Virus record (IMG/VR): IMGVR_UViG_3300042261_002390
Coordinates: 1 to 64,000 of that record
DNA: 64,000 bases
Reading direction: 5' to 3' (one strand)
Of this stretch, positions 1 to 63,815 are shown piece after piece. A program made the translations under genes and the position numbers. Below the pieces are notes generated by a model. The model was not told where the DNA came from. It worked only from the letters and a program-made list of their open reading frames with translations, and searched no databases. Within the stretch, counting starts at the first letter, position 1; each line of letters starts with the position of its first letter.

Positions 1-402
1 TTATATCCTAATTTTATCATTGCATTTTTTACTAATGTCTGTGCTTGTGAGATACTTATTGGTTTTTTTTTGTGGATTAAAACCAGTGGTACTTAGCCAT
101 TCTTGAAATCCATCTTGGAACTCTTGTGGTGTATCGATACGAGATGCAGCATATTTGACTGATGCTGATTTATCTGTTGCTTTTTGTAAATATGCCACAT
201 CAGCAGGTACTTTGTATTGCGTCGTTGGTAATTGTTCGTCAATTGGTACGCAGTTAGGTACTTCTTTACCTTCCTTATCTTTCATACCATATTGTTTATA
301 GCCATCCCAACATGAATCTTCTTCATTTAACACCGTTTTATATCCGGGATTTATTTTTCCCATCATTTCAAATAGTTTCTGTTTATTTTGAACATTTTTC
401 AT
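1..402 (-). CDS. Putative head-associated/internal protein with shared N-terminal leader and CWxGY...VPNC motif
   Basis: Likely true start MKNVQNKQKLFEMM at 402 (GGTATTTATA motif on the minus strand at ~418-426); contains CWDGYKQYGMKDKEGKEVPNCVP, a motif type seen in T4-like phage late proteins; TAA stop at 1-3. Confidence 0.6.
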   Translation of the reverse strand: MKNVQNKQKLFEMMGKINPGYKTVLNEEDSCWDGYKQYGMKDKEGKEVPNCVPIDEQLPTTQYKVPADVAYLQKATDKSASVKYAASRIDTPQEFQDGFQEWLSTTGFNPQKKTNKYLTSTDISKKCNDKIRI

Positions 403-434: not shown

Positions 435-466
435 AAAAAAATGCACCAAGAAATATGGTGCATTTT
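435..466 (-). terminator. Intrinsic terminator-like hairpin
   Basis: AAAATGCACCA (438-448) / TGGTGCATTTT (456-466) 11-bp stem with T-run on the minus strand. Confidence 0.6.
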
Positions 467-641
467 AATCTCATCAGTCAGTCTCAAATTTTACGTAACC
501 ACTGTCTGGCAATAAAATTTTGAAAAATCATTCCTGATTTTCTCTCAGACATAACTTAATTCATTCATACATTAAGCAATGATTTTCATTTAATAAATAC
601 TGTATTTCATGAAATTTATTATGGATTAATATAAAACATTT

Positions 642-650
642 AGTATTTAT
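642..650 (+). promoter_or_regulatory. Putative late promoter motif AGTATTTAT (first of ~25 copies)
   Basis: Same GTATTTAT core recurs ~15-70 nt upstream of starts at 402(-), 667, 3909(-), 3986, 5177, 7760, 10254, 10863, 13002, 15110, 21296(-), 22811, 30013, 32212, 35920, 38615(-), 40772(-), 41076, 43980, 44419, 48997(-), 53850, 54986, 57942; CTATTTATA variant before 21398 and 22025. Confidence 0.75.
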
Positions 651-666
651 TATAAATTTTAAATCG

Positions 667-1266
667 ATGAGCACAAAAAATTTAATAAAAATCATTAATG
701 AAACTATTGAAGAATTTGATTTTCTCAATAACGAATCTTCGCTTATGGAACAGGAAACCATTGAATTGCTGAAAAATGAAGATTTACAGAAACGATTTAT
801 TTGTGATTCATTATTGGAGAGAAATGATAAAATAAAAATCCTTAATAATGAAACAGCTAGTTTAGACGGTAATTGGGAAGATGACCCTGAAAACGCAAAC
901 ATGCTTTCAATTCAATATGACCTAAAGTTACAATACACATATGATTCGAGTAAAGAACCTTTAGTATTTAATTTATTTTTTTATGGTGATAATGTTAGTA
1001 TTTCTACAGCAGATAGATTTGAAAAGGGCGATTATTACTCACCATCAGAAGGAGAATCTTGGTTTAGAAATATTGAATGGGATGATATTAATGTTGAATT
1101 GGCAACCGAAGAAGGTGATGAAATTAGATTTATAGCATTTGAAAAAGCACCGTATAATATTAAAAGAATATTCATACGTGAATTTGTCGAAAATTTTATT
1201 AGTTCATATACGAATATGGATGTTCGTGATAATATTGATAAATCACAAGTAACACAATTCTGCTGA
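667..1266 (+). CDS. Hypothetical late protein (acidic)
   Basis: 199-aa ORF behind late motif; N-terminal LIKIINE; no recognisable catalytic motif. Confidence 0.6.
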   Translation: MSTKNLIKIINETIEEFDFLNNESSLMEQETIELLKNEDLQKRFICDSLLERNDKIKILNNETASLDGNWEDDPENANMLSIQYDLKLQYTYDSSKEPLVFNLFFYGDNVSISTADRFEKGDYYSPSEGESWFRNIEWDDINVELATEEGDEIRFIAFEKAPYNIKRIFIREFVENFISSYTNMDVRDNIDKSQVTQFC

Positions 1267-19700: not shown

Positions 19701-21296
19701 TATGTTATCATTGAGATTATCATTACCACTATCTCTCATACCATAATTAGCAATAATTCTTTTAAAATCAGGCTTATTATGGTGGTCTTGTGCAGATATT
19801 GATGTTGCCCTTAAAATATTGAAGAATTTATCAACATCATTCAATATTATTTTAAAGATGTTATATATGGTGGGTCTCATACCCAAAGTTTGCTCAATTG
19901 AATTATTAATTTTCTCATTAATTGATTTAGCTACATCTTTTTTGCTTTTTTCAATATCAATTTTCGATTTATATAATTTAACATAAAAATCAGTAACATC
20001 AAGAACAGCATATTTTAGTTCAAGATTTGAGTTGTTTGAATTGGTAGATAAATCAAAATTATTGTAAATCACCGTTAATGAAATATCGCTATTAACAATA
20101 CTTCCCTTAGTACCGCTCATAGCACCACTTGTTAATAATTGTGTACGATATATATCCAATCTATTGTTAAGAATAGCTATATTGCTTGGGTTTGAAATAT
20201 ATCCAACATATAATCTTTTAGATGTAGTACTTGGAGTATCTGTAGCATTAAAATTCTTAATAACATCATCATATTCGTAAATTGTTTTTAGTGGGGTGAT
20301 AACATTATCACCAACTTTACTTGTTGCAGGAGGATTTGCAATAGAATAAGATAGCGATGCATCAATATATTGACCTACAACACCTGATATTAAATTTTCA
20401 TAACCAATAGGTTGTGATGAGGCACTTGTATCACTAATAAACACATATGGAATTGCATTTCCATCACTTTTTAATGCATCATAAAAATTAGCTAACGCTT
20501 CTGTTGCTGTTTTATTTGCTTGTAGCTCGTTATTTAATGCATCATATTTATCACTATCACTATTTGTTTTAAGCTGCTTATCGACAACGCTATATAAATT
20601 TCTCAATTTTAAAATCAAATCATTTGTATTTGCAGGAGGCTGCGAAGTGTCTGAATTTATAGATTGGGCATTATTATCCATTAATGGAAAATTAACGATA
20701 TATCTAAACAATACATCACTCAACGGTGCAAACGTAATCGCAACAAATTCACCATTAATAATAAAATTACCACTTTCTGAACTAAATTCAGTGGTATATT
20801 TTACCAAATGTAGTTTATAGCTTAATGTTCTACCATAATAACCCTTAATTTTTAATTCAAAAGTTGGTGGTGGAAAATCAAACAATATTCTATATGGTGA
20901 ATTTTCTTGGTTAAAGAATGATAAACCTCTCAAGTCAACAAATTGTATTGATACTTGAGGAATAAATGATGAATTAATAACTACTTTAATATTAGTAATA
21001 CCAAATGATTCAAATTGTGTTTCATTATTCATTGTACTACCATCATAATAATTTGTGGTAAAATTAAGATAATTTGGATTGTCAGGATTTTGATTGTTTC
21101 CTAAAAAATTTACAATTACATCAACATCAGTTTTTAAACCTTCACCAACCACGATAACACTTCTTCCTTTCCTAGAAGCAGTTAATTCAGCAAATATGTG
21201 CATATCCTGATATTGTGGAATTGCATTAGGTATTGCAGTATTAATGTTAACACTGTTTGGGTCATCTAAATATTTGATATTGTTTTGACTTGGCAT
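16770..21296 (-). CDS. Very large baseplate hub-like protein (gp27/GPD-type C-terminus)
   Basis: ~1508 aa; N-terminal FGITNIKV...SIQFVDLRG; C-terminal ATISGLGNAMIQPTQYFQL...GAYLIVSVEHEI...TSFSG typical of hub proteins; start MPSQ at 21296 follows the late motif (21313-21321, minus strand). Confidence 0.6.
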   Translation of the reverse strand: MPSQNNIKYLDDPNSVNINTAIPNAIPQYQDMHIFAELTASRKGRSVIVVGEGLKTDVDVIVNFLGNNQNPDNPNYLNFTTNYYDGSTMNNETQFESFGITNIKVVINSSFIPQVSIQFVDLRGLSFFNQENSPYRILFDFPPPTFELKIKGYYGRTLSYKLHLVKYTTEFSSESGNFIINGEFVAITFAPLSDVLFRYIVNFPLMDNNAQSINSDTSQPPANTNDLILKLRNLYSVVDKQLKTNSDSDKYDALNNELQANKTATEALANFYDALKSDGNAIPYVFISDTSASSQPIGYENLISGVVGQYIDASLSYSIANPPATSKVGDNVITPLKTIYEYDDVIKNFNATDTPSTTSKRLYVGYISNPSNIAILNNRLDIYRTQLLTSGAMSGTKGSIVNSDISLTVIYNNFDLSTNSNNSNLELKYAVLDVTDFYVKLYKSKIDIEKSKKDVAKSINEKINNSIEQTLGMRPTIYNIFKIILNDVDKFFNILRATSISAQDHHNKPDFKRIIANYGMRDSGNDNLNDNIYAFPLIISKQNNDQEVRISPILINKSLPASDPFPEMQLVTKFIDTFTLQRQKAADAMMKEETDAEGNNVWIPISPFDSSLSTNNPASPYSNIDSTTGSVNLSADSRINQILKILLDRFYVLTQSSLPDGFYNNVTEANGAYVDLYSKSEALNLILSINNTGLSSNLKTFANNNKNPDNFYKYLSNNLTDVYAFPEFGVESIDNINGAYVDKTNPNYVGLNIVDEAIDLQQPTADGSKPLDIFVSTVERGFFKKLFNGRLPEESYLFTTQNLIFIKDAFVKNNAVNDEEIDDFEGISLQTRYLTSVASFNNEKTANAAIEVLLDKGNAGFAELGLNPPSENYGLKSFSNVVDRWIKTLSAYDDDLFDDVINTESDLSAIILLSNFGYTLSCFNIYPKNLNHVIFQTPAVVEVPNYLQYYIGGLVNAKNNGLLDELKAFYSTGGGSKFNGLVNLYMFADIEDIDKILSEKDKETFAAKYEVFRTSYYLTMRAQLKLMYNEVKSLVNSKKMNKYTAYESYLNPKTENPENHGSFFKPILGQLLTKTNIVIFSQNTFKNVPKKEKYDSLINVNLNANKKAVNDRYFKGLMERIGSELVAKENKKIKEDEETKKLSGDEDILTQTYYSFKNINDKWLCSPERKLGANDGYPFNKPNKELIDSFAFVDRAMNPIGDTVINPEILLDLFNDTNVSVYSVLAQILSMNGFEFFPLQNFMTYSDNSWTDTFKIDPVGEVEQTSAFVCMYIGGSSSYPTNINNGFKNDGILNIGTTDAKEFSSNSVPNPEYDSQYQRNSSNFPWRQVRAFNVKFGQQNQSMFSSIKIDSKEYPETNESIQILARLAGDEGKNAPIPKGQNLYNLYENRAYKATISGLGNAMIQPTQYFQLDNVPLYNGAYLIVSVEHEINANSMKTSFSGTKILRYPMPRVLNPAAGMGFQGGSSDETNYNTPLSSQSIGEIVQGASSELNPDKAKYNSMYTINIQ

Positions 21297-21397
21297 ATTA
21301 TTGGATTTTTTATATAAATACGAACCCACAAAAATTACAAAATTATAATAATTATTGAAACTATTTAACTATTTATATCCATAATATATTAACATAA

Positions 21398-26230: not shown

Positions 26231-27688
26231 ATGGTTTCATATCAATATAAAATTAGAAAAGAAAAAGAATTGTCTGAAGTGCTTGATTTTGATATTAATC
26301 ATGTAAATCTACATAATACGACAATAAGAGAAATTAATAAAAAAACAGCAACAAAAATAATATTAGAGTATGAATATTTACATTCAATGCCTTTTGCTTG
26401 TAAATATTTTTTTGGGATATATTTTAATATTAATAATTGTGAATATTTGGGAGGTGTTTTAGTTTTTGGCAATGAATATTCTGAAAATACTGGTGCTTGG
26501 CAAAAATATGGATACGAAGATAAGATTCTGCTATTAAGTCGTGGGGTTTGTTTATGGTGGACACCAAAAAATACAGCATCATATTTTATTAGCAGGGTTT
26601 GTGATATACTAAAAAAAACCACCAACTATAAAATAATTACAGCTACTGTAGACCCTGCTGCTGGTGAGATTGGGACAATTTATCAATCATTAAATTGGTA
26701 TTATGTTGGCTTAATGAGTGGCAATTATCATGGTAATAAAATGGCAACTCGATTCGGAGTTATAATCAATGGTAAATTACGATTGTCACGGTGGATACGT
26801 AATAAAATAGGTAGTATGCGCCGTGAAGAAATTTTAAAGCATTATCCGGATGCTATATTTGTACCACAATACAGAAAACAAAGATATTTTTATTTCATCG
26901 GTAATAAAACAGAAAATAGAAAACTTATTAATAGTATTAAGCATCTATTATTACCATATCCCAAAAGAAATAATCAGATTTCAGGAATAATTTATTTAAT
27001 AAAAAATGAAATTAACAATAAAATATATGTAGGGCAAACAATTCGTTCATTACGTGATAGAATTCGTGAATATGAAAAAGGATTTGGCAATGTATATTTA
27101 AACAATGCATTTAAAAAATATGGTTGGAGTAATTTTAAATTTGAAGTAATTGATACTGCAGAGAATTTGGAAGAATTAAATGAAAAGGAAATCTCTTACA
27201 TTAAAAAATATAATTCAAACAATAAAGAATTTGGGTATAATATTGAATCCGGTGGAAAAAATGCAATTCCTGATACTGAGACGTTAGAGAAAATGTCTAA
27301 ATCACATTTAGGCATTGTTCAATCTGAAGAATGGATTAACAGAAGAATAGCTAAAGCAGGTACTGATGAAGCAAAAAAATACGGTAAAACAAAAACAGAG
27401 GATGAAAAAACACAATTAAGTATTAATTCTCCAAAATATTGGAAAGGTAAATCTCGTGATACTAAGACTAAAGAAAAAATCAGTAAAACAAAACTTGAGA
27501 ATGGATTGTCTGAAAAACAAAAAGAAGTATTATTAAAAAAAGTATATAAAGTAGATATTATCAACAATACTACAATAGAATATGAGTCAACATTATCTGC
27601 ATCAATAGCAGAAAACGTAAATCAATCTACAATATCAAGACGATGTTCGAAAAATAAAATAATAAAAAACATATTGTGGAAATATTAA
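26231..27688 (+). CDS. Mom-family DNA-modification (GNAT-like) domain fused to a GIY-YIG homing endonuclease
   Basis: N-half: EYLH...GVLVFG...LSR...KNTASYFI...VDPAAGEIGTIYQSLNWYYVG...KQRY...YPK (Mom pattern); C-half: GIIYLIKNEINNKIYVGQT, GYNIESGG, NUMOD3-like repeats, C-terminal HTH. Confidence 0.75.
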   Translation: MVSYQYKIRKEKELSEVLDFDINHVNLHNTTIREINKKTATKIILEYEYLHSMPFACKYFFGIYFNINNCEYLGGVLVFGNEYSENTGAWQKYGYEDKILLLSRGVCLWWTPKNTASYFISRVCDILKKTTNYKIITATVDPAAGEIGTIYQSLNWYYVGLMSGNYHGNKMATRFGVIINGKLRLSRWIRNKIGSMRREEILKHYPDAIFVPQYRKQRYFYFIGNKTENRKLINSIKHLLLPYPKRNNQISGIIYLIKNEINNKIYVGQTIRSLRDRIREYEKGFGNVYLNNAFKKYGWSNFKFEVIDTAENLEELNEKEISYIKKYNSNNKEFGYNIESGGKNAIPDTETLEKMSKSHLGIVQSEEWINRRIAKAGTDEAKKYGKTKTEDEKTQLSINSPKYWKGKSRDTKTKEKISKTKLENGLSEKQKEVLLKKVYKVDIINNTTIEYESTLSASIAENVNQSTISRRCSKNKIIKNILWKY

Positions 27689-49887: not shown

Positions 49888-50700
49888 TTATACAACTCTC
49901 AATTTAGATAATCGAGTCATATCAATTTGTCTGTCGGTAATAAAATTAGCTTCAGTAGTTGCAGTATCAAACCAAAATTTTCTTTCATTAACAGGCATCG
50001 TTTTCAAATAATTATCAAATAAACTATTCTCTCTTGTTGCCAAATGTTTATATCCAATTTTAGGTATTGTATAAACCTTACAGGCATTATTTAATGCTCT
50101 AAGTAAGAACTCATACATGAATGCTAATTTAATATTTACTTTATATCTACCAAGATTAATAAATTCCGATTTTTTAATAACAGCACCGGATAATTTAAAA
50201 TCTGTATATTGTTTTAATGCATTTGCATTCAAATAACCCATTTCACCATTTTCCCCAACAAATTGTTGTGCCCATACAGTTTCATTTGTTACTTTAATAC
50301 CTTCATTTTTTTCATTAACCTCAATTAACATACTTAAAAATACATCAATATCCGGATATGCATTAATATGTTTTATAACATTGTTGAAATAAGTCGTACT
50401 AAACTCATCATCAAATTCAAGAACAGTAAAATAATCGGTTTCAATGGATTCTACAGCGAGATTTACTTGTGCTTGGTATGAGGTATCACCATTATTTACA
50501 ATTACCGTAGCTCCCGGAACATCAACCAACAATAATTTAATATCATTTTCAATGTTTGGTGGACAAACTACAATAATTTTAGGAAGACTCGTAGTATTTT
50601 CTTGTTTAACTACTGATTCAATTGATTTTTCTAAATAACTTTTAATTAAGTCATTATATTCATGTACTGGAATTATTACTGAAATATTCATATTTATCAA
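49888..50700 (-). CDS. Glycosyltransferase family 2 (GT-A)
   Basis: ISVIIPVH, SYQAQVNLAV, FTVLEFDD (DxD-like). Confidence 0.85.
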   Translation of the reverse strand: MINMNISVIIPVHEYNDLIKSYLEKSIESVVKQENTTSLPKIIVVCPPNIENDIKLLLVDVPGATVIVNNGDTSYQAQVNLAVESIETDYFTVLEFDDEFSTTYFNNVIKHINAYPDIDVFLSMLIEVNEKNEGIKVTNETVWAQQFVGENGEMGYLNANALKQYTDFKLSGAVIKKSEFINLGRYKVNIKLAFMYEFLLRALNNACKVYTIPKIGYKHLATRENSLFDNYLKTMPVNERKFWFDTATTEANFITDRQIDMTRLSKLRVV

Positions 50701-53849: not shown

Positions 53850-54755
53850 ATGAGCGATAATTTAACACCACAAAAAGAAAGTATCGGCGATGCATTAAAA
53901 AAATATAGTGAAAGTCGAGGTATTGTAAATGATGAACAAGTTGTAACTAATGTTAATATACCTAAAGCATCATATAATCAACAAGATTATGAACAATTAA
54001 TGTCTAAAGAAACTGACCCTGATTTAATTACTTCATATGAAATAGTTAAACTACCATCAAATGGTTTATTTTACTCTAACAGAATATCTGAAGTAAAAAT
54101 TGAATATATGACTTCTAAAGACGAAGATTTGTTAACAACACCTTCATTAATTGAAAATGGTACTGTATTGGATGTTTTATTAAAAAGAAAAATAAAGACC
54201 CCGGGAATTAATGTTGATACATTACTTGAAGGTGATAGAAATGCATTACTTTTATTCTTAAGAACTTCAAGTTATGGTTCAGATTATACAGTTCAAGTAA
54301 CTGACCCACGCTCTGGTATACCTTTTACAACAAAAGTAGATTTACTAAAATTGAAATATAAAACAATCAATGAATTGCCAGATGAAAATGGATACTTTAG
54401 TCTTGAGATTCCTATGAGAAAAAAGAATGTAAAAGTGAAATTATTATCATCCGGGGAAGATAGAAACATAAAAAAAAGAGCAGATGCAATTCAAGAAGCA
54501 TATAATGAAGAATTCAATCAATATAATACACTTAAATTAAAAGCAACTATAATATCAATTAATGGTAAAACAGATAGGTCATATATTGATAAATTTGTTG
54601 ATGCAATGCCAGCACTTGATGCATATGCTATTCGTAGAAAAATACTTGATGTGAGTCCGGACGTTGATATGTCATATGAATTTATGGCAAAAGACGGATA
54701 TACTTTTAATGCTAATCTAACAGTAGGAATTGATTTTTTTTTCCCCGGGATTTAG
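53850..54755 (+). CDS. Baseplate hub/tail assembly chaperone (T4 gp26-like)
   Basis: VKLPSNG..Y, YMTSKDEDLL, GDRNALL.FLR..SYG..Y, ends IDFFFP; upstream of the tape measure gene. Confidence 0.8.
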   Translation: MSDNLTPQKESIGDALKKYSESRGIVNDEQVVTNVNIPKASYNQQDYEQLMSKETDPDLITSYEIVKLPSNGLFYSNRISEVKIEYMTSKDEDLLTTPSLIENGTVLDVLLKRKIKTPGINVDTLLEGDRNALLLFLRTSSYGSDYTVQVTDPRSGIPFTTKVDLLKLKYKTINELPDENGYFSLEIPMRKKNVKVKLLSSGEDRNIKKRADAIQEAYNEEFNQYNTLKLKATIISINGKTDRSYIDKFVDAMPALDAYAIRRKILDVSPDVDMSYEFMAKDGYTFNANLTVGIDFFFPGI

Positions 54756-54985: not shown

Positions 54986-57523
54986 ATGGCAACTAACGAC
55001 TTAAATACACTAAAAGCACTGATTGCTGAACAAGAAGCACTAAATCAATTATATCTTAATGCAACGGATATACAACAAAAAAAAGATGCAATTGAAAAGC
55101 AAATTTTAAACGATAAAATGCTTCAACGTGAGCAAGAAAGGCTTATCGGTGAAATGTTGGCTGGTAATCTTAATCTAAGTAAAGAAGACCTTAAAACGCT
55201 TAATGGACAGGTAGATAGACATCGTAAGATAAATGAATACTTGAAGGATGAAAATAAAAATCGTAAAACTGGTGTTGATTTAGTTAAAAAGTTAAATACT
55301 GGTTTATCTAAGACTTGGGAGTATTTGATGCAATCTGATAAAGTAATCAGAGAAACAATCCGTAATTTAGGCATGTCAGGTGCTAAAGCCGATGCAATGA
55401 GAAAATCATTTGAATTATCGGCAATGAATGTTGCTCGTATGGGTGGTAGTTTAGCAACAATTCAATCAGTTATGGAAGGTTATGCTGAAGAAACTGGTAG
55501 AGCACGTGCATTAACTGCTTCAATGGTTGAAGACATTACATCCATTGGACTTGGAACTGGATTAGGAATTGAGCAAGCAACCAAATTAGGCGCACAGTTT
55601 GAATTAATGGGTTTTGACGCTAGAAAAACAGCACAATATGTTCAAGGTATTGTTGATACTTCTGAAAGAATGGGTGTTAATACGACCAAAGTATTAAAAA
55701 ACTTAAACGATAACTTTAAAAAAGTCAATACATATAGCTTTAAATCAGGAAGTAAAGGAATTGCTGAAATGGCGATGAATGCTGAAAAATTTAGAGTTGA
55801 TATGAAAGATGCATTATCTGCTGCCGATGCTGCTAAAAGCCTTGAAAAAGCAATTGATTTGGCAGCAAATTTACAGGTAATGGGTGGTGAATTTGCAAAA
55901 ACAGACCCGTTAGAATGGATGTATCTTGCACGTAATGAACCAGATAAACTAACAAAAAAATTATCTGAAATGACTAGGGGTTTAGTCACGTTTAAAAAAA
56001 ATAGTGAAGGTACATTTGAAAAATTTATTAGTCCTGCTGATAGACAAAGGCTAGAAAGTGTTGCACAATCATTAGGTATTACTGCCGAACAAATGACAGA
56101 AATAACAGAAAGACGTGCAGAACTAGACTTAATGGCTAGACAATTAGCTGGAACTGGATTAACTGACAGAGAAAAAGAATTAGTTGAAGGTGCTGCAATA
56201 TTTAATGCTAAATCAGGTAAATTTGAAGTCCAATTAGCAGGTAGAATGCAAGATATATCGACATTAACAGCAAATCAAGCAAAATCATTTGTTAAAGAAC
56301 AAGCATCGTTAAAAGAAAGAGCAATGGCTGCTCAAACATTTGATGAAGCACTTAAAGCCACAATCGAGGAATTTAAAACAGTATTGCTTCCAATGCTCAA
56401 AGGTATTAATGATATGCTTAAGTGGGTTAGACCTATTGCGGTGAGTTTCAACAACTTCATTAATAGCATTACTAAAACAGATTTAGGTGGAACATTATTA
56501 AAAGCTGCTGGTTGGATGATGGCTGCAGGTTTTTTGATTAATAAAGCAGTAATAGCTTTTAGTTTAAGCGGTAAAGGACTTGGCGAAAGGTTGATTGATA
56601 AAATATCAGGTAATGGTACAAAAACTACAGGATTAGGTGGGTATATAAACCAAAGAAGTGCAGCTAGAAAAGCTAGATTAGCTACTGGTGGTGGAATTAG
56701 TAATCCAAATGCGGGAAAAGGATTAATGCGTGGTGGTACTGGTATAGGTGCTGCTGCACTTGGTATAGGTGCTGGTATAGGTGCTGCTGCTGCAGGTATT
56801 AGTTTATTAGCAGATTCTATGTCAAAATTAACACCACAACAAGCAGAAACATTAAAAAGTATTGTAAGTTCTATTGGGTGGTTTGTAGTTGGTGGCATAG
56901 CTGCTGCAGTTGGAATTAGTTTAATTGGTAAAAGTGCTGAATTATCTGCTGCTGGTTTAGGTATGTTATCATTAACTGCAATAAGTATTGGTGCTGCAAT
57001 GGTTGGCGTTGGGTTTGGTATTAAATTAGCTGCTGATGGTTTAGCTAATTTAGTCATTTCAAGCAAAGGTGCTGGCACAGATATGTTAAAAGTTGCCGGA
57101 GGTATTGCAGCAATTGGGGCATCTTTAGCTATGTTTAGTTTCGGTGGTATTGGTTTAGGAGTTTTTGCTGCAACAATGGCAACTATTGCATTAACAACAC
57201 CAGCCTTAGTTAAAGCAGGAACAGCATTTGAGCAAATGGGTAATGCAGTACTAAATTTAAAAGGTACAAAAGAAGACTTTGTTGCAATTCAAAATGCAGT
57301 TGAATCAATATCTAAAGCGAATAATAAAGGTGGAGGTATGTTAGCTGAATTAGCAACATTATTAAAATCTCCATTAAAGGTAGAATTTGTTGACAAAAAT
57401 GTTGCAGTTGTAAGTGATATAACATTAAACATTGATGGTCAGAAGTTTATGCAAAAAGTTTATAAAGCACCTGCTGCTGTTCAAAAAAATGTTGAGGCAA
57501 AAACACAAGGTTTACCGGGCTAA
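54986..57523 (+). CDS. Tape measure protein
   Basis: 845 aa, Ala/Gly-rich helical protein with hydrophobic stretches; follows the chaperone pair; precedes baseplate genes. Confidence 0.85.
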   Translation: MATNDLNTLKALIAEQEALNQLYLNATDIQQKKDAIEKQILNDKMLQREQERLIGEMLAGNLNLSKEDLKTLNGQVDRHRKINEYLKDENKNRKTGVDLVKKLNTGLSKTWEYLMQSDKVIRETIRNLGMSGAKADAMRKSFELSAMNVARMGGSLATIQSVMEGYAEETGRARALTASMVEDITSIGLGTGLGIEQATKLGAQFELMGFDARKTAQYVQGIVDTSERMGVNTTKVLKNLNDNFKKVNTYSFKSGSKGIAEMAMNAEKFRVDMKDALSAADAAKSLEKAIDLAANLQVMGGEFAKTDPLEWMYLARNEPDKLTKKLSEMTRGLVTFKKNSEGTFEKFISPADRQRLESVAQSLGITAEQMTEITERRAELDLMARQLAGTGLTDREKELVEGAAIFNAKSGKFEVQLAGRMQDISTLTANQAKSFVKEQASLKERAMAAQTFDEALKATIEEFKTVLLPMLKGINDMLKWVRPIAVSFNNFINSITKTDLGGTLLKAAGWMMAAGFLINKAVIAFSLSGKGLGERLIDKISGNGTKTTGLGGYINQRSAARKARLATGGGISNPNAGKGLMRGGTGIGAAALGIGAGIGAAAAGISLLADSMSKLTPQQAETLKSIVSSIGWFVVGGIAAAVGISLIGKSAELSAAGLGMLSLTAISIGAAMVGVGFGIKLAADGLANLVISSKGAGTDMLKVAGGIAAIGASLAMFSFGGIGLGVFAATMATIALTTPALVKAGTAFEQMGNAVLNLKGTKEDFVAIQNAVESISKANNKGGGMLAELATLLKSPLKVEFVDKNVAVVSDITLNIDGQKFMQKVYKAPAAVQKNVEAKTQGLPG

Positions 57524-57941
57524 AAGTGTTAAAAAATGTTAAAAAATGGCATATTTGAGAAAATCACTAGAATATGTCATTTTTTTCTTGTAACTTTGAC
57601 GCAGTTTTGCTTCGCTCACGCAAGCTTCCGCTACACAACACAGCTTTTCTCGCTTCTTCGAAACCAGAAACAAACTTACAATGTTTGTGATTTGATTTAA
57701 AAATCGAACCAAAACTTGAAATAAAAGGATAGCTATGCTCATATTGTAACCAATATTCAAAAATAAAATCAAAAGTAATAAATTTATTTGAAAAATTGAA
57801 TAATTATAATTAAATCCCAATTATTGTTTTAGTATATATTGTTGATATCACTAGCTCCGGGTTTGGAGTAGACTCCGGCAATGTAAAATTAGATATTATA
57901 AATTTAATATGCAAGTATTTATTTTAAAATATCACATTTTA

Positions 57942-60900
57942 ATGGCACTTCAAGATAATAGAACAAATTCAAGATTATTAACAAGCACTAGCGTTTTAAG
58001 GGAAAAGCTAAATTCTCGTAATTTATATACACCAAATGTTGAATATCCTCTTAGTAATGATAATAATGTTAATAAAACGGTTAGTGCAATAAATACCATT
58101 ATTGCTGGATTAACACCGTTCAAGTCGTATAATCTTGAAAACACTGTTTATGGTAGAATAATAAATAATGAAACTCCATTGGCAACAATTGGTTTGGCTA
58201 TGTTGGGTAAACAAATGGCATTAAATTCAATGTCAAGTATTGCTCAAGAGAATTTTCCAAAAATAAATGTGGCAAATCTTTTTGATAAAGATAGTTCAAC
58301 TAAATTATTCACCAAACAGATTGATTATAGTGTAACCATTAAAACTGGTACTACTGCATTTAGTAGATTTTTAAGTTCTGCTGTATATTGGTATCCTCAG
58401 AAAAATAATCCATTTAAGCCAACATCAATTAACTCTGATTATATTCAACAGACAGGTATTGGACAATTAAAAAGTTTATATTCTTTAGTTAATAAAAATA
58501 TATATAAACCTGACGACACGGATGAGATTAATAGTACTTTTTATTCATATGCCGATGTTGCTGGTGTTACTATTTTGCCTAGAATAAGTATTGTGGCTAA
58601 TAGAAAATATTATGATGCCATAAAATATGCCCCATACAGTCCATTTTATAGTATCTCTGTTTCAGCTATTGTTATTGCTGATAGTAATATGATTAATTCT
58701 GTTAGTACTGAATATAATACAGAATATGCACCAAATAATTCATATGTTGAATCGTATTTTGGAAAAACTAAATTAAATAATGACGCTAAATTAAATTCAA
58801 TTTCCAATACTTGGATTGATGACGAAACTCCATTTAAAAATGATGGTCTTACTAATAAAATTGTTTGGGGTAGAGATGGTATTATTGATGAAGTAAATAA
58901 AAGTTCATCTGATTTAAGAGGTTTAGATGAAGATACATATTCTAATTTTCAAATACAGGATTTAACTGAAAAATTCAATGTAAGAGGCGGGTTATTAGAA
59001 TATACCAGAAATTTAATAAATGCTACTGAAGGTAAAATTGGTGATTTAACTAGAAAAGCGTTTCTTAATAATAATAATGAACCAATCGGTTTTAATGGTT
59101 CTGCATTATGGAATGCATCAGCCAATTCATTACCTTCATTTGCTGGTAAAACAGGTGTACGTCAACATTCTGTATTAGACCCTTATAATCGATTTGCTAA
59201 AGCAATTAGATTTGATGGCAATAGTGTATATAATGGTAATCCGGATTCAGTTATTTATAATTCAGTAATGCCTAGAATTCACCCAACTATTAATGACAAT
59301 GGTAATGGTATAAATAACAAAAACCTAATGTTTAGTATTGAAAATCTAGCCATTAACGTAATTAGTAAAGAGGGATATGGTATTATTGACGATGAATATG
59401 GCTCACAAATTCCATTAGAAGAAGTAGGTCCTTTTAATGGTCGTATTATGTGGTTTCCACCATATGCTATTGACATTAATGAAACAGCAACAGCTAAATT
59501 TGAACCAACTGTAATGGTGGGTAGAAATGAACCGATGTATAATTACATGAATTCTGAAAGAAGTGCAACATTAAATTTTAGTTTGTTAATTGACTATCCA
59601 CCACAAGTAAAAAATTTAACATCGCAAAAGGAAATTGCAGAATTTTTTGCATATGGTACGATTTTTAATGATGAAAAAAAATATGCAAGTAATCTTGAGA
59701 GTAAAATGACTTCTCTTCAGAATCAAATTGATAATATTCTTAATAGAAGAGATATTAAGTTTAATGAAATTAAAATTCCAGATGCAATTTCAATATATTT
59801 TACAAATGATTCACCTAAAGTTGGTGAAGAAAGTACTATTATTGATAAGATGTATGGCAATTATGCGTATGAAATTACATCACAAGTATTATCAAAAGTT
59901 GATAATAATAGTTATGGATATAATAAACCTGTATATTTTATAAGCGGGTTAACTTCTTATGATTATAGTGGTAAAACTATGTATCAATTCACATCAACAC
60001 CTTCATTTTCACAATATACTATGAGTGGTTTAACAGACCAATTTGGCATTGTTGAATTAAATAAAATGTTAAAAGATACTTATGAAAACGAAGAAAATCG
60101 AAAATATTATGATATTGCAATACATGGTGGTGCAACTAAATTATATACTGAAGCTAATCCGAACGATATTCAGGCTGAAATTGATTATAATAAAAAATTA
60201 GGACAGCGTAGAGCAGATGCCGCTAAAATATTAATTACTAAAAGATTGGAAGCAATGTTTGGCAAACCAATTAATCAATTAGGAATTAATATTAGTAGTG
60301 TCTCAAGTGTTGGAAGTAGTCAAGCAAGTCCAAATAATGCAACAGCAGCAGCAATATCTACATCGGAAGCAAAACAAGAAAGATATGCAAGAATAAGAAT
60401 CGTTAGAAATTCAACACCATATCAGCCAAAGCTTGATAAATTGACATCTGATGAACAAGCAACTGTTGATAAATTAAAAAGTGAAATTGAGGCAATTAAA
60501 ACTCAGTTAAGTCTTCTTCAAAATAATTCATCAACAATGATGAAAGAAAGAAGAGAAGATAAAACTGCAATTTTAGATGGTTTTAAATCAATAAAAGATA
60601 ATTATTTATATCCAGCATTTCATTCACAAACCCCGGAAGATTTTCATAAGCGTTTAACCTTCTTGCAACAATGTACTAGACAGGGTTCGGCTAAAAGATA
60701 TGATGTAAAACCTGATGCAAATGGTATTTTAAGAGCTAGAAATTCAGTGTTTGGTCGTCAACCAATATGTATTTTAAGAATTGGTGATTTTTATTATACT
60801 AAAGTGATTATTGAAACTATTAATTTTGATTATAGTGATACTACTTGGGATATGAATCCCGAAGGCTTTGGTATGCAGCCAATGATGGCTAAAATTACTT

Positions 60901-61145
60901 TAACTATGAAAATATTGGGTGGTCAATCATTGAAAGGACCTGTCGATGCATTGCAAAATGCAGTTTCGTTTAATTATTATGCTAATTCAAGTTATACTGA
61001 TAAGGGCATGTATTTATTACCTTCAGCAATGGCTGCTTTAAATGATAGTTATCGTAACGGAATTGATACTGCTAATATGTCAAGTGTCGATAATATTAAT
61101 ATAACAGGTAAATTTATTACGAGAAATTTAAATAATACTGAATAA
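57942..61145 (+). CDS. Tail-tube initiator/baseplate protein (gp48/gp54-like) with inserted OmpA-like domain
   Basis: MWFPPY...GRNEPMYNYMNSERSATLNF and QPICILRIGD...VIIETINFDY...PMMAKITLTM tube-fold blocks flank IYFTND...YNKKLGQRRA...RYARIRI; start MALQD at 57942 follows the late motif (57914). Confidence 0.65.
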   Translation: MALQDNRTNSRLLTSTSVLREKLNSRNLYTPNVEYPLSNDNNVNKTVSAINTIIAGLTPFKSYNLENTVYGRIINNETPLATIGLAMLGKQMALNSMSSIAQENFPKINVANLFDKDSSTKLFTKQIDYSVTIKTGTTAFSRFLSSAVYWYPQKNNPFKPTSINSDYIQQTGIGQLKSLYSLVNKNIYKPDDTDEINSTFYSYADVAGVTILPRISIVANRKYYDAIKYAPYSPFYSISVSAIVIADSNMINSVSTEYNTEYAPNNSYVESYFGKTKLNNDAKLNSISNTWIDDETPFKNDGLTNKIVWGRDGIIDEVNKSSSDLRGLDEDTYSNFQIQDLTEKFNVRGGLLEYTRNLINATEGKIGDLTRKAFLNNNNEPIGFNGSALWNASANSLPSFAGKTGVRQHSVLDPYNRFAKAIRFDGNSVYNGNPDSVIYNSVMPRIHPTINDNGNGINNKNLMFSIENLAINVISKEGYGIIDDEYGSQIPLEEVGPFNGRIMWFPPYAIDINETATAKFEPTVMVGRNEPMYNYMNSERSATLNFSLLIDYPPQVKNLTSQKEIAEFFAYGTIFNDEKKYASNLESKMTSLQNQIDNILNRRDIKFNEIKIPDAISIYFTNDSPKVGEESTIIDKMYGNYAYEITSQVLSKVDNNSYGYNKPVYFISGLTSYDYSGKTMYQFTSTPSFSQYTMSGLTDQFGIVELNKMLKDTYENEENRKYYDIAIHGGATKLYTEANPNDIQAEIDYNKKLGQRRADAAKILITKRLEAMFGKPINQLGINISSVSSVGSSQASPNNATAAAISTSEAKQERYARIRIVRNSTPYQPKLDKLTSDEQATVDKLKSEIEAIKTQLSLLQNNSSTMMKERREDKTAILDGFKSIKDNYLYPAFHSQTPEDFHKRLTFLQQCTRQGSAKRYDVKPDANGILRARNSVFGRQPICILRIGDFYYTKVIIETINFDYSDTTWDMNPEGFGMQPMMAKITLTMKILGGQSLKGPVDALQNAVSFNYYANSSYTDKGMYLLPSAMAALNDSYRNGIDTANMSSVDNINITGKFITRNLNNTE

Positions 61146-61146
61146 A

Positions 61147-61461
61147 ATGCCATACATAGACTATAATAGATATGCAATACTCCAAAATACAAATGGTACT
61201 ACTGATGCAATGCCATTTGTAAATCTTCCTATAAATCAGAGTGATAAATATGAATATTGGAGTTCAGTAACGAGCAGAATGGATAAATTATCTCAAAAAT
61301 ATTATGGAAATCCATTTTACGATTTCTTGATATTATATGCTAATCCAGAATATGTTTCAGAATTTGATATTTCTGACGGTGCTCTTATTAGAATACCATT
61401 TCCTTTGGCTAAAGTAAAGGCTGATTATGAGGCAACATTAACACAATATAAAAAACAATAA
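61147..61461 (+). CDS. LysM-like baseplate wedge protein (gp53/P2 X-like)
   Basis: RMDKLSQKYYGNP...ILYANP...GALIRIP. Confidence 0.8.
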   Translation: MPYIDYNRYAILQNTNGTTDAMPFVNLPINQSDKYEYWSSVTSRMDKLSQKYYGNPFYDFLILYANPEYVSEFDISDGALIRIPFPLAKVKADYEATLTQYKKQ

Positions 61462-61526: not shown

Positions 61527-62213
61527 ATGAAAAAAACAAAAATTATTGTTATTTTTTCTTCACATTTAACTGAAGATGAGAATAATAAATTTATAAAGCA
61601 TGTTTCGGACACTATTGGTGTTAACCATATTGTAGTCTGTTATCCAAATTTTAATCAATTTAGCTTACCTCAGATTTACAATACTGCACATCGTGAACAT
61701 TATAGTGATGATTCAATAATGGTTTTTTGTCATAACGATATTACGTTTAAGACAAATAATTGGGGTAGATTATTGCTTACTAAATTTAATAGTACTGATT
61801 TTGATATTATAGGTGTTGCTGGAAGTACATATTTAGCTGAAAATGGGGTTTGGTGGGATGATAAAAGTAAGATGTTTGGTATTGTTGAACATACTGACAG
61901 TATTAATACTTGGACAAGTGAATACTCTAAACATATTCCCGGGTACATTAAACCTGTTGTTTTAGTTGATGGTTTGTTTATCGCAGTAAATTACGATAAC
62001 ATTACTAATGATTGGGATGAAGATTTTAAAGGATTTCACTATTACGATATTTCATTTGGATTTAATAATGTATTGAGTGGTAATAATATTGGTGTAACTA
62101 CTGATATTAGAATATTACATCAATCAATTGGTATGGTTAACGAGCAGTGGGAAGAAAATAGAAAATTATTTATTAAAAAATATAAAAATTATTTGCCATA
62201 TTCTATTAAATAA
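61527..62213 (+). CDS. Glycosyltransferase (GT2-like)
   Basis: SLPQIYN, VFCHNDI, IIGVAG, VVLVDGLFIA, GFHYYDISF. Confidence 0.85.
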   Translation: MKKTKIIVIFSSHLTEDENNKFIKHVSDTIGVNHIVVCYPNFNQFSLPQIYNTAHREHYSDDSIMVFCHNDITFKTNNWGRLLLTKFNSTDFDIIGVAGSTYLAENGVWWDDKSKMFGIVEHTDSINTWTSEYSKHIPGYIKPVVLVDGLFIAVNYDNITNDWDEDFKGFHYYDISFGFNNVLSGNNIGVTTDIRILHQSIGMVNEQWEENRKLFIKKYKNYLPYSIK

Positions 62214-62246
62214 ATATAAACATAAACTACTAATAACATATGAAGA

Positions 62247-62876
62247 ATGATACAAGTAGATAAAATTGAAGACGGATTGCCAGTTAGTGTAATTGTTCCA
62301 TTAAGTAAACAAAGAAAGGATTTTTTCGAGAATATGGTTCTACCATTGATTGAAGCAAATGGGGTTAATGAAATCATTATCAACGATGATGAGGGTTCAG
62401 CACCTAAAAAAAGAAATGATGGTTTTAAACGTTCTACTCAACCATATGTGTTTTTTTGTGATGATGATATTTTATTGCCAGCAGACTATATTGGAGCATT
62501 GTACGAAAAACTTGAAAATAATCCTGATGTTTCATTCGTATATACCGGATATCACGGAATAGTATTATACCCTGAAACACACCCAATGCGTGGAAATTTT
62601 CAGATTCCTAATATTGAATTTAATAAGTCTGCATTAATGCAGGGAAATTATATTTCGACCATGACATTAATGCGCCGGGAAGTATTTCCGATGTTTGATG
62701 AAAATTTAAAAAGATTACAGGATTGGGATGTCTTTTTAACTATTGTTAAAAATGGTGGCAAGGGAATGCTTGTGCCAAATCAGACATTTTATGCATATTA
62801 TTTAGATTCTGGTATTACTTCAAACAACAATAATGAAATTGATGCAGTCTTTGCTATAAGAAAAAAACATTTTTAA
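62247..62876 (+). CDS. Glycosyltransferase family 2
   Basis: VSVIVP, APKKRNDG, FFCDDDI, FDENLKRLQDWD. Confidence 0.92.
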   Translation: MIQVDKIEDGLPVSVIVPLSKQRKDFFENMVLPLIEANGVNEIIINDDEGSAPKKRNDGFKRSTQPYVFFCDDDILLPADYIGALYEKLENNPDVSFVYTGYHGIVLYPETHPMRGNFQIPNIEFNKSALMQGNYISTMTLMRREVFPMFDENLKRLQDWDVFLTIVKNGGKGMLVPNQTFYAYYLDSGITSNNNNEIDAVFAIRKKHF

Positions 62877-62879
62877 ATT

Positions 62880-63815
62880 GTGAAAAGGTCTAATATCAAT
62901 AAAAAAGAATTAATTGCTAGAAAAATTAAATACAGACATGAACAAAATTTGTTTCTGAATAATATGAATGATAGAGATTTAAGACGATTTAATAAAATTG
63001 AACCAAAACCTGATGTAACCGGATTAAGTCGTGGGGATAGACGAAGTGGAAACTATTTGGATTTAGTTGAAAATAATTATATTAAAAAAGAAAATGTCGA
63101 TGTTGATATTGTAATTTGTATTCCATCACACGATAGATATGAAAAATTAAAAAGAATTATTGAACAAATAAAAGATTCTAATTCAAAATATAGTTATTTA
63201 ATTGTTATATTAAATGATGGGTCATCTGATGAAAGATATAATACGTTAGTTAATGAATACCCAAATATTATTCAGATAGTAAATAGCGTTCCGAATGGTA
63301 AAGCATTACACTGGTTTTGTTATAATCAAATGTGGAATGTTTTAAAAGGTTGTATTTGTCATGCTGTTTTACAAATGGATGATGATTTTATATTGTGTGA
63401 CAATTTTCTTGATATAATTGTTGATTTATTTTTTGAAAAGAAAAATGTTAATAGTAGAATTATGGCAATTTCACCTCATCTATGGTCATTTAAAAAAGCT
63501 TGTAAATATGAGTCGTGGTGGAATAGAAATGATTTGATTGATGGTATTGCATTGATTGATTATGATGTTATAAAATATTTGAATTTTGAATTACAGCCAG
63601 TAAATGCTAAGGATGTAATTAAACCGGGTGTACAAGTGAGAGCATGGACACAAATTTCTATGGGAATTAAAATGTATAGAGGCATTATTTTTAGAACATC
63701 CGAATCGTTGGTTTTCCATGACGGTAATGAAGATTCTAAATTACATGGTGATTTTAGAAAAGTAAAAAAAATATATACACATAATTTTATTAATAAAAAT
63801 ATTGAATATGATTAG
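62880..63815 (+). CDS. Glycosyltransferase family 2-like
   Basis: IVICIPSHDRYEKL, ILNDGSSD, LQMDDDF. Confidence 0.85.
   Translation: MKRSNINKKELIARKIKYRHEQNLFLNNMNDRDLRRFNKIEPKPDVTGLSRGDRRSGNYLDLVENNYIKKENVDVDIVICIPSHDRYEKLKRIIEQIKDSNSKYSYLIVILNDGSSDERYNTLVNEYPNIIQIVNSVPNGKALHWFCYNQMWNVLKGCICHAVLQMDDDFILCDNFLDIIVDLFFEKKNVNSRIMAISPHLWSFKKACKYESWWNRNDLIDGIALIDYDVIKYLNFELQPVNAKDVIKPGVQVRAWTQISMGIKMYRGIIFRTSESLVFHDGNEDSKLHGDFRKVKKIYTHNFINKNIEYD

What the first reader, a model, noticed from the sequence alone, without database searches (positions are those of the whole stretch)
59780..60410. OmpA-like peptidoglycan-binding domain inserted inside the tail-tube initiator fold
Between the two halves of the gp48-like tube fold lies IYFTND...IAIHGG...YNKKLGQRRADAAK...GINI..VSSVG...RYARIRI, matching the OmpA/MotB C-domain pattern (N..L...RA..V and terminal R.V.I). 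It is flanked by coiled coils and followed by a LysM wedge gene. Inference: a baseplate arm that anchors to peptidoglycan during injection.
Basis: partly seen in the sequence, partly recalled or inferred. Interest (0 to 1): 0.6.

Follow-up and report, generated by a model that had tools for sequence, protein, structure and literature searches.

The report
OmpA-like domain inside phage tube initiator
A large uncultured freshwater phage carries a cell-wall-binding type (OmpA/Pal/MotB-like) domain on a helical stalk, spliced into the protein that starts its tail tube, so the tube tip may grip the host's cell wall during infection, although no binding has been tested.

Summary
ORF 57909-61145 (+), probably starting at 57942, encodes a protein of about 1,070 aa. 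Residues 617-835 fold as an OmpA/Pal/MotB-like domain. The AF2 model is confident only in this part. It aligns to the A. baumannii OmpA-like domain at VIA Z 10.7, with 118 of 119 residues aligned. The domain profile hits only Pal/OmpA-type chains in the PDB. Pfam OmpA matches 17 of 44 family members, though not this protein itself.

The flanks (about 451-590 and 905-1003) together form a contractile-tail tube or tube-initiator fold (Afp7/Pvc7, T4 baseplate chain; Z 7-8.5). The gene lies between a tape-measure-like gene and a LysM/gp53-like gene.

One nested natural homologue (P0108) lacks exactly residues 611-852, so the domain is a separable module, ancestral in this family and lost once.

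Three of the four DAP-contact residues (N761, L764, R768) are invariant. The canonical Asp position holds Ser/Thr, and about half the members, this one included, have an Asp at the right spacing after a loop insertion.

Peptidoglycan anchoring is plausible but untested. I rate this a new variant of a known kind.

The parts
57942..61145 (+). Gene for the tube-initiator-like protein (P0001). The ORF opens at 57909, but homologues start at the Met at 57942 (M12).
   Evidence: M12 invariant; consensus starts MA...; 889 full-length relatives
57942..59258 (+). N-terminal region, aa 12-450. It is conserved in the family, mostly helical in the model, and has no recognised fold or family.
   Evidence: (low pLDDT)
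59259..59678 (+). First half of the tube/tube-initiator beta fold (aa ~451-590; FSIENLA...GRIMWFPPY...GRNEPMYNY).
   Evidence: model range 1..332 of P0108:452-851; 6j0n_b aligned over 451..1003
59685..59741 (+). Ascending stalk helix (aa 593-611).
   Evidence: In the insert-less homologue the two helices are joined by a short turn (H147-163, H168-203).
59757..60413 (+). OmpA/Pal/MotB-like domain (aa 617-835).
   Evidence: pLDDT 83-94; Z 10.7, 118/119 residues of 3td5_A
59817..60053 (+). Family-specific subdomain of about 80 aa inserted in the beta1-alpha1 loop of the OmpA-like fold (aa 637-715). It contains a beta hairpin (681-694) and invariant Y654 and Y703.
   Evidence: Canonical domains are 108-120 aa, against 219 aa here.
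60165..60224 (+). Core ligand-pocket motif D753-x6-Y760-N761-x2-L764-G-x-R767-R768-A769. T743 occupies the canonical 'GHTD' Asp position.
   Evidence: residue roles taken from the TagL paper PMC8253398
60447..60524 (+). Descending stalk helix (aa 847-872).
60621..60917 (+). Second half of the tube/tube-initiator fold (aa ~905-1003; FHSQTPEDFHKRLTFLQQCTRQG helix plus three strands).
59739..60464 (+). Segment (aa 611-852) absent from the natural homologue P0108. These are the limits of the separable module.
54986..57523 (+). Upstream 845-aa gene, tape-measure-like: N-terminal coiled coil and Gly/Ala-rich hydrophobic segments. This is inferred from composition and position only.
   Evidence: sequence; no family hit; same synteny in L002
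61147..61461 (+). Downstream 104-aa LysM/gp53/gpX-like small baseplate protein.
   Evidence: phrog_7145 baseplate wedge subunit, E 2.8e-6; Atlas clusters LysM / Phage_gp53 / Phage_tail_X, 0.95-0.98
53850..54755 (+). T4-type baseplate hub protein.
   Evidence: PF12322, E 1e-8; phrog_150 baseplate hub, E 4.4e-9

Best explanation
P0001 is the tube-initiator (tube-to-hub adaptor) protein of a large uncultured freshwater contractile-tailed phage. Its tube-fold core is interrupted, between the long beta hairpin and the outer helix, by an antiparallel two-helix stalk. At the tip of the stalk sits an OmpA/Pal/MotB-like domain enlarged by an ~80-aa subdomain in a pocket-lining loop. Shown here: the fold, the insertion topology, the modularity and the conservation of the pocket. 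Inferred: the ring of initiators sits at the distal end of the tube next to the spike. When the sheath contracts, this end is driven through the outer layers of the host envelope. The stalked OmpA-like modules then meet the peptidoglycan and bind it non-covalently through the conserved Asn/Leu/Arg pocket. This would hold the tube tip on the sacculus while a genome of roughly 330 kb is delivered.
For: OmpA-like identity rests on four results. Pfam OmpA matches 17 of 44 members. The PDB profile hits are all Pal/OmpA-type. Foldseek's best 50 are all OmpA-like. VIA gives Z 10.7 with whole-domain coverage.

Tube-initiator identity of the flanks is supported as follows. Foldseek E 4e-4 to 1e-3 at probability 1.0 to CIS baseplate chains from Streptomyces, PVC, AlgoCIS, Anabaena and AFP, and to the cyanophage A-1(L) baseplate initiators. 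VIA gives Z 7-8.5 across both halves, including a T4 baseplate chain. BFVD gives 41 hits at E <= 1e-3, and the named ones are 'CIS tube protein N-terminal domain'. The synteny is hub, tape-measure-like gene, this gene, LysM-like gene.

Modularity: P0108 lacks aa 611-852 cleanly and keeps the same synteny.

Pocket: N761, L764, R767 and R768 are invariant in 44 members, A769 is present in 39 of 44, and D753 has the same D-N-L-R spacing as TagL D486/N494/L497/R501. The module is kept in 119 of 120 family representatives that carry both flank motifs, and in a 36%-identical outgroup.
Against: No binding data exist. The canonical Asp of 'GHTD' is Ser/Thr in all 44 members when aligned by the strand. 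An Asp at the helix-register spacing is present in only 26 of 44 aligned members and 54 of 114 motif-bearing members. P0001's own domain does not reach any Pfam threshold. One nested lineage lost the module, so it is dispensable at least there. The tube-fold model is of low confidence (mean pLDDT 60) and its Z scores are in the range the tool calls middling. The host and its envelope type are unknown. Six bulky arms, plus a 450-aa N-terminal domain per subunit, may not pass through the baseplate and the outer membrane. Where the module lies in the virion is unknown.
Confidence: 0.45

Rival explanations
1. The OmpA-like fold is a purely structural baseplate module. As with the LysM-like folds of gp53/gpX-type proteins, an old cell-wall-binding fold has been recruited for protein-protein contacts, for instance to lock the initiator ring to the wedges until triggering, and it never touches peptidoglycan.
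For: The canonical Asp is replaced by Ser/Thr throughout the family. The module lies inside a protein that sits in the core of the baseplate. A LysM-like protein with a presumed structural role is encoded next door. The module can be lost.
Against: The residues that contact DAP and are needed for wall binding in TagL (Asn, Leu, Arg, Ala) are invariant or nearly so, although the module averages 40% column identity. Ser/Thr at the Asp position is itself conserved (44 of 44), which suggests a maintained pocket. Presentation on a helical stalk suits reaching out better than packing.
Confidence: 0.3
2. The module binds a ligand other than canonical meso-DAP peptidoglycan. Candidates are a modified stem peptide, or another envelope polymer met at the cell surface. 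It would act as a central secondary receptor-binding or triggering element.
For: The Asp-to-Ser/Thr change alters the pocket chemistry. A conserved ~80-aa subdomain (invariant Y654, Y703; near-invariant I656, G670, N672, Q702) is inserted in the beta1-alpha1 loop, one of the three loops that line the binding crevice in TagL. The beta2-alpha2 loop varies in length among members.
Against: Nothing positive points to another ligand. The Arg/Asn/Leu set is the one that holds the DAP residue in solved complexes. Every solved relative found is a peptidoglycan binder or presumed to be one.
Confidence: 0.15
3. The motif resemblance is chance, or the ORF is not a real gene.
For: P0001 alone gives no Pfam, PHROG or PDB sequence hit.
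Against: 889 relatives were found, with full-length conservation. Profile, member-wise Pfam and structural matches all point only to OmpA-like domains.
Confidence: 0.01

Closest known systems
OmpA-like peptidoglycan-binding domains (Pfam PF00691: OmpA C-domain, Pal, MotB, RmpM, YfiB, T6SS TagL/TssL, ZorB)
   Same: Same beta-alpha-beta-alpha-beta-beta core: Z 10.7 to 3td5_A with 118/119 residues, Z 10.4 to TagL 7bba_D with 110/111. Same YNxxLGxRRA helix, with invariant Asn, Leu and Arg. Non-catalytic.
   Different: It is not periplasmic and not membrane-anchored. It is embedded in a virion protein with no signal peptide. The domain is about 219 aa rather than 108-130, because of an 80-aa insert in the beta1-alpha1 loop. 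Ser/Thr replaces the canonical Asp. About half the members, this one included, have a ~10-aa insert in the beta2-alpha2 loop that brings another Asp to the canonical spacing.
Tube initiators or tube-baseplate adaptors of contractile systems (Afp7/Pvc7/Cis7-type chains of eCIS baseplates, cyanophage A-1(L) baseplate initiators, the T4 baseplate chain 5iv5_BE, probably gp48 by its residue numbering)
   Same: The tube-like beta fold aligns over ~120-145 residues, Z 7-8.5. The gene lies after the tape-measure-like gene and next to a LysM-like gene.
   Different: There is no sequence-level similarity. The protein is three to five times longer. It has an extra 450-aa N-terminal region. The LysM part is a separate gene rather than a fused domain. 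The fold is interrupted by a stalked OmpA-like module. No OmpA-like domain in a tube initiator was found in the papers searched.
T6SS wall anchors (TagL, TssL extensions; PMC8253398)
   Same: An OmpA-like domain attached to a contractile injection machine to fix it to peptidoglycan. The same pocket residues are present apart from the Asp.
   Different: In the T6SS the anchor holds the machine to the wall of the cell that fires it, from the inside, through a membrane complex. Here it would hold the tube tip to the wall of the target cell. The analogy is functional, and membership of that system is not implied.
Virion-associated cell-wall-binding modules on phage tails (LysM, SH3b)
   Same: Two BFVD structural neighbours of the tube-fold part are myovirus proteins named as SH3b / lysin wall-binding (A0A8S5UFK2, A0A8S5PQM2). 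This hints that tube-fold baseplate proteins carrying wall-binding modules occur elsewhere.
   Different: The binding fold is different. Those names are automatic annotations that I could not inspect. No lytic domain was found in P0001.

Membership tests
OmpA-like domain (PF00691 / OmpA-Pal-MotB superfamily) | Sequence match to the family model | tested here: inconclusive
   P0001's own piece gives no Pfam hit at E <= 1, and the six-frame search of the genome gives none. However, 17 of 44 orthologous pieces hit PF00691 (best E 4e-6). The family profile hits only OmpA-like PDB chains (best E 0.003).
OmpA-like domain (PF00691 / OmpA-Pal-MotB superfamily) | beta1-alpha1-beta2-alpha2-beta3-alpha3-beta4 fold covering the whole domain | tested here: met
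   The AF2 model has pLDDT 83-94 over aa 600-870. VIA: Z 10.7, rmsd 3.0, 118/119 residues of 3td5_A; 108/108 of Pal 4g4w. The best 45 rows are all OmpA-like, as are Foldseek's best 50.
OmpA-like domain (PF00691 / OmpA-Pal-MotB superfamily) | Pocket residues that hold the DAP residue: Asn, Leu and Arg of NxxLxxxR (TagL N494, L497, R501) | tested here: met
   N761, L764 and R768 are invariant in 44 members, and A769 is present in 39 of 44. Residue roles come from PMC8253398.
OmpA-like domain (PF00691 / OmpA-Pal-MotB superfamily) | Canonical Asp after strand beta2 ('GHTD'; TagL D486) | tested here: inconclusive
   In the strand register the position holds Ser (40) or Thr (4) of 44. A gapless alignment of the short-loop member P0098 to E. 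coli Pal pairs 'GAAS' with 'GHAD'. In the helix register P0001 has D753 exactly 8 residues before N761, as do 26 of 44 aligned members and 54 of 114 motif-bearing members. Which residue sits in the pocket could not be read from the model.
OmpA-like domain (PF00691 / OmpA-Pal-MotB superfamily) | Binds peptidoglycan | not testable with these tools
   This needs a sacculus pull-down or muropeptide binding assay.
Contractile-tail tube initiator / tube-baseplate adaptor (gp48/gp54, Afp7/Pvc7 type) | Tube-protein-like beta fold | tested here: met
   Foldseek E 4e-4, probability 1.0, to eCIS baseplate chains and the A-1(L) initiators. VIA Z 7-8.5 with 120-145 residues aligned across both halves. BFVD gives 41 hits at E <= 1e-3. 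Caveat: the model's mean pLDDT is 60 and the Z values are in the range the tool calls middling.
Contractile-tail tube initiator / tube-baseplate adaptor (gp48/gp54, Afp7/Pvc7 type) | Gene placed with the tape measure, hub and LysM-type baseplate genes | tested here: met
   Hub gene at 53850-54755. Tape-measure-like gene at 54986-57523 (inferred). LysM/gp53-like gene at 61147-61461. The same order is seen in L002.
Contractile-tail tube initiator / tube-baseplate adaptor (gp48/gp54, Afp7/Pvc7 type) | Sequence homology to T4 gp48/gp54 or to PHROG/Pfam initiator families | tested here: not met
   No PHROG, Pfam or PDB sequence hit for P0001, for the 44 members scanned singly against PHROGs, or for the family profile against the PDB outside the OmpA part.
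Contractile-tail tube initiator / tube-baseplate adaptor (gp48/gp54, Afp7/Pvc7 type) | Forms the ring between hub and tube in the virion | not testable with these tools
   This needs cryo-EM of a family member. No cultured member was found.

The most novel reading that the evidence does not exclude
A widespread family of large freshwater and groundwater phages carries non-lytic peptidoglycan anchors on the first ring of the tail tube. After contraction the tube tip would be clamped to the target cell's sacculus by up to six stalked OmpA-like domains with a remodelled (Ser/Thr for Asp, enlarged) pocket. This would be a phage-side, outside-in counterpart of the TagL/TssL and MotB wall anchors, and a previously undescribed step in genome delivery.
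Probability: 0.35. Interest if true: 0.7.

Novelty: new variant of a known kind. Interest (0 to 1): 0.55.

Why it matters
Little is known about how contractile tails hold their tube in place in the periplasm while DNA passes. The known wall-directed tail modules are mostly lytic (lysozymes, transglycosylases, peptidases), or are LysM/SH3b binders. A conserved, non-catalytic OmpA-like module sitting exactly at the tube-hub junction suggests a mechanical anchoring step, and the idea is directly testable with pull-downs and pocket mutants. The family is large (889 hits) and is absent from cultured phage collections and from PHROGs. The finding therefore also gives a function-bearing annotation to a very common 'hypothetical protein' of environmental large phages. 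The natural insert-less variant supplies a ready control.

Tried and rejected
- **Direct family scans.** Pfam and PHROG scans of P0001 gave nothing. A PHROG scan of all 44 members gave nothing above noise. phmmer of P0001 against the PDB gave nothing useful.
- **Cultured phages.** tblastn against 50,697 GenBank phage records gave no match.
- **Own genome.** The Pfam OmpA model against the genome in six frames gave no match.
- **Profile against the PDB.** The whole-family profile against the PDB found only the OmpA helix and nothing for the tube part.
- **Whole-protein fold.** The AF2 model of the whole protein was poor outside the OmpA module. I therefore folded the flanks using the natural insert-less homologue, and that model is still of modest confidence.
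- **Module in other architectures.** A word search with the domain profile, limited to proteins of 124-394 aa, found only a fragment of the window's own protein. The search is word-limited, so this is weak negative evidence.
- **ESM Atlas.** The search with the domain gave only sub-threshold leads (best 0.86; an OmpA cluster at 0.82).
- **Host inference.** The genome collection gave only three MAG contigs, labelled Paceibacterota, Nealsonbacteria and Psychracetigena. These are most likely mis-binned phage contigs and are no host evidence.
- **RNA features.** Rfam and tRNA scans of the window found nothing.
- **Literature.** Searches found no report of an OmpA-like domain in a phage tube initiator. 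The library is incomplete, so this is not proof of novelty.
- **Not run.** I did not run the large representative-protein search or a complex prediction, because no claim here rests on them.
Full report
**Setting**

The window is the first 64 kb of a 246-kb IMG/VR virus record, estimated 75% complete and labelled 'provirus'. Its G+C content is about 30%. The stretch is held by freshwater and lake-water metagenome runs.

The window encodes a large terminase, a portal, a major head protein and a tail sheath. Around the finding it also encodes a T4-type baseplate hub protein at 53850-54755 (PF12322 E 1e-8; phrog_150 E 4.4e-9). This is a large contractile-tailed phage. It has no close relative among 50,697 GenBank phage records.

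**The gene**

The finding lies in ORF 57909-61145 (+), 1,078 codons, stored as P0001. Homologues begin at the Met at 57942, which is M12 and is invariant.

The word-index search found 889 relatives. The best 120 are almost all 1,050-1,150 aa long and align over 95-99% of the query. They sit on metagenomic contigs of up to 372 kb and are nearly all unnamed. One (P0098) was named 'OmpA-like peptidoglycan-associated protein' by JGI.

Neither P0001 nor the 44 members scanned one by one match any PHROG. P0001 matches no Pfam family.

**Is the OmpA-like domain real?**

Yes. Four lines of evidence agree.

1. I cut the corresponding piece from 44 members (alignment A2) and scanned each against Pfam. 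PF00691 OmpA was hit by 17 of the 44 (best E 4e-6). No other family was hit by more than three. P0001's own piece did not hit.
2. A profile of A2 against all PDB sequences returned Pal, P6, OprF, YfiB, RmpM and other OmpA-family lipoproteins as its best 20 hits (best E 0.003). These aligned on D-x6-YNxaLGxRRAxA.
3. An AF2 model of the whole protein is poor overall (mean pLDDT 61) but confident precisely over aa ~600-870 (block means mostly 83-94). There it shows strands 627-630, 734-741, 794-802 and 826-833 and a long helix 754-784.
4. Foldseek's best 50 PDB matches for that model are all OmpA-like domains: OmpA-C, MotB, Pal, YfiB, RmpM, TssL, ZorB and PorE. The VIA second look gives Z 10.7, rmsd 3.0 Å, with 118 of 119 residues of the A. 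baumannii OmpA-like domain aligned to model residues 617-835. It also gives Z 10.3 with 108 of 108 residues of Pal, and Z 10.4 with 110 of 111 of TagL. The best 45 rows are all OmpA-like.

The domain is about 100 residues longer than canonical ones. A conserved subdomain (aa ~637-715, with a hairpin at 681-694 and invariant Y654 and Y703) is inserted between strand 1 and helix 1.

**Is it inserted in a tube-initiator fold?**

Among the relatives, P0108 (851 aa) aligns to P0001 residues 12-610 at 52% identity and to residues 853-1073 at 64%. It has only about 13 residues of its own in between, so it lacks residues 611-852 cleanly. Its contig has the same gene order: a 984-aa gene, this gene, then a 104-aa gene.

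I folded P0108:452-851 with the family alignment (A3). The result has mean pLDDT 60 and pTM 0.53, with strands at 66-83.

- Foldseek's best PDB matches are baseplate chains of extracellular contractile injection systems (Streptomyces, PVC, AlgoCIS, Anabaena, AFP), the 'baseplate-initiators' of cyanophage A-1(L), and pyocin R2. E values are 4e-4 to 1e-3 at probability 1.0.
- VIA gives Z 7-8.5 with 120-145 aligned residues to the same chains, and to initiator or tube chains of phiCD508, phi812, P1, E217, Pa193, XM1 and Mu. It also matches a T4 baseplate chain, 5iv5_BE, with chain range 59..355. From my memory of the T4 protein lengths, that range fits gp48 rather than gp54.
- The model ranges are 1..332, so both halves are used.
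- In the whole-protein model, PVC chain 6j0n_b aligns across 451..1003, straddling the OmpA module (Z 8.2).
- In BFVD there are 41 matches at E <= 1e-3. The named ones are 'contractile injection system tube protein N-terminal domain' proteins of myoviruses.

The Z values are in the range the tool itself calls middling, and the model is of modest confidence. I therefore treat this as good but not conclusive evidence. It is reinforced by gene order. The upstream 845-aa protein has the coiled-coil plus Gly/Ala-rich hydrophobic make-up of a tape measure (inference, no family hit). The downstream 104-aa protein matches phrog_7145 'baseplate wedge subunit' (E 2.8e-6). Its nearest Atlas clusters are LysM, Phage_gp53 and Phage_tail_X (scores 0.95-0.98). 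In eCIS initiators the LysM domain is fused to the tube domain, whereas here it is a separate gene.

The two helices that flank the module (593-611 and 847-872) form an antiparallel pair joined by a short turn in the insert-less protein. In P0001 the OmpA-like domain therefore sits at the tip of a two-helix stalk.

**History of the module**

Of 120 representatives that carry both flank motifs, 119 have the long spacing (360-420 residues) between WFPPY and FHSQTPED. Only P0108 has the short one (170 residues).

A 36%-identical relative on a MAG contig (L005) also has the module, without obvious flanking coiled coils.

I built a FastTree (LG+gamma) on the flank columns only, rooted on L005. It places P0108 deep inside the family, as sister to P0001-P0003. 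Support values were not examined, and all 47 rows were kept. The module is therefore ancestral and was lost once. This shows that it is separable and, at least in that lineage, dispensable.

A word search with the module profile among proteins of 124-394 aa found nothing but a fragment of the window's own protein.

**The pocket**

In TagL the DAP residue is held by D486, N494, L497 and R501. N494, L497, S498, R501 and A502 are needed for wall binding (PMC8253398).

P0001 has D753, N761, L764 and R768 with identical spacing, followed by A769. In the 44-member alignment:

| Position | Conservation |
|---|---|
| N761, L764, R767, R768, Y760 | invariant |
| G765 | 41 of 44 |
| A769 | 39 of 44 |

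The Asp is the weak point. Members with a short beta2-alpha2 loop lack it. In a gapless alignment of such a member (P0098) to E. coli Pal, 'GAAS' pairs with 'GHAD'. The canonical Asp position therefore corresponds to residue 743, which is Ser in 40 and Thr in 4 of the 44 members.

P0001, together with 26 of 44 aligned members and 54 of 114 motif-bearing members, has a ~10-residue loop insert that brings another Asp to exactly 8 residues before the Asn. I could not read from the model which residue lines the pocket.

Most of the pocket is under strong constraint, but it is not fully canonical. In addition, the beta1-alpha1 loop, which lines the crevice in solved structures, carries the conserved 80-aa subdomain.

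**How it most likely works**

Shown here: an OmpA-like module with a largely conserved ligand pocket, on a helical stalk, inserted in the tube-fold core of the protein encoded between the tape-measure-like gene and the LysM-like gene.

Inferred from what is known of contractile tails: initiator rings sit at the distal end of the tube on top of the hub and spike, and this end is driven into the envelope on contraction. The stalked modules would then be the tube-borne parts that come closest to the wall. My best explanation is non-covalent anchoring of the tube tip to peptidoglycan during delivery of a very large genome (confidence about 0.45).

The main rivals are:
- a purely structural role inside the baseplate, as for LysM-like folds (about 0.3);
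- binding of a different ligand by a remodelled pocket (about 0.15).

Several points count against the anchor model:
- the missing canonical Asp;
- the loss of the module in one lineage;
- the bulk of six such subunits, each also carrying an unexplained 450-aa N-terminal region;
- the unknown host envelope. The three genome-collection hits are MAG contigs labelled as CPR or other taxa, probably mis-binned, and give no host evidence.

**Comparison and novelty**

As a fold and by sequence profile, the module belongs to the OmpA/Pal/MotB superfamily. As a peptidoglycan binder it is untested.

The host protein works like a gp48/Afp7-type initiator by fold and by context, but it shows no sequence membership in any described initiator family.

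I found no paper describing an OmpA-like domain in a phage tube initiator or baseplate. The hits concerned T6SS anchors (TagL, TssL) and Zorya.

Two BFVD neighbours of the tube fold are myovirus proteins auto-named as SH3b / lysin wall-binding, which hints that wall-binding modules on such proteins may be a wider theme.

I rate this a new variant of a known kind, with interest 0.55.

Noticed in passing
window 57524-57941: There is a gap of about 420 nt with no convincing ORF between the tape-measure-like gene and the initiator gene. A similar ~490-nt gap exists in the relative L002 (3346-3838). Several blocks are shared (e.g. TTTTTTGTAACTTTG, ACAATGTTTGT, CTATGC.CAT), and small hairpins lie near 57850-57880. 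It gives no Rfam match. It could be a promoter or regulatory region, a small RNA, or the minus-strand ORF 57539-57820.
   Followed up: partly
window 61527-63815 and 49888-50700: Three consecutive family-2 glycosyltransferase genes lie directly downstream of the baseplate genes, and a fourth lies upstream on the other strand. This is an unusual place for them. They might glycosylate virion proteins or DNA, or modify the host surface.
   Followed up: no
window 26231-27688: A 485-aa ORF next to the major head gene combines a Mom-like DNA modification part (phrog_1384, aa 22-254) with a GIY-YIG-type homing endonuclease part (phrog_314/7168/5123, aa 252-485).
   Followed up: no
window 15890-16768 (-) and 16770-21329 (-): A 292-aa ORF with a weak SLT lytic transglycosylase match (E 6.8e-5, below the cut-off) lies next to a 1,519-aa ORF. 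This may be a virion-associated wall-degrading pair. A clearer SLT gene lies at G000 181842-182195.
   Followed up: no
window 57942-59258 (P0001 aa 12-450): The N-terminal 450 residues of the initiator-like protein are well conserved in the family (many invariant positions), but have no family or fold match and a low-confidence model.
   Followed up: partly
L003 (JBAZIW010000001.1, 362,763 bases), L004, L005: Relatives of this phage gene sit on contigs filed in MAGs of Candidatus Paceibacterota, Nealsonbacteria and Psychracetigena. A further one (P0115, on a 357-kb contig) is labelled Dehalococcoidia. These look like large-phage contigs binned into bacterial genomes.
   Followed up: no
G000 as a whole (window = G000:C1:1-64000): The record is labelled 'provirus' by IMG/VR and is 246 kb at 75% estimated completeness. 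Relatives lie on 320-372-kb contigs. The gp25-like wedge gene is far away at 145322-145579, so the baseplate genes are split between at least two clusters.
   Followed up: partly
BFVD entries A0A8S5UFK2 and A0A8S5PQM2: Two structural neighbours of the tube-fold part are uncultured myovirus proteins of 748 and 568 aa, auto-named 'Lysin-wall binding, endolysin, PBC5, SH3b' and 'SH3 domain protein'. They may be other tube-fold baseplate proteins that carry wall-binding modules.
   Followed up: no
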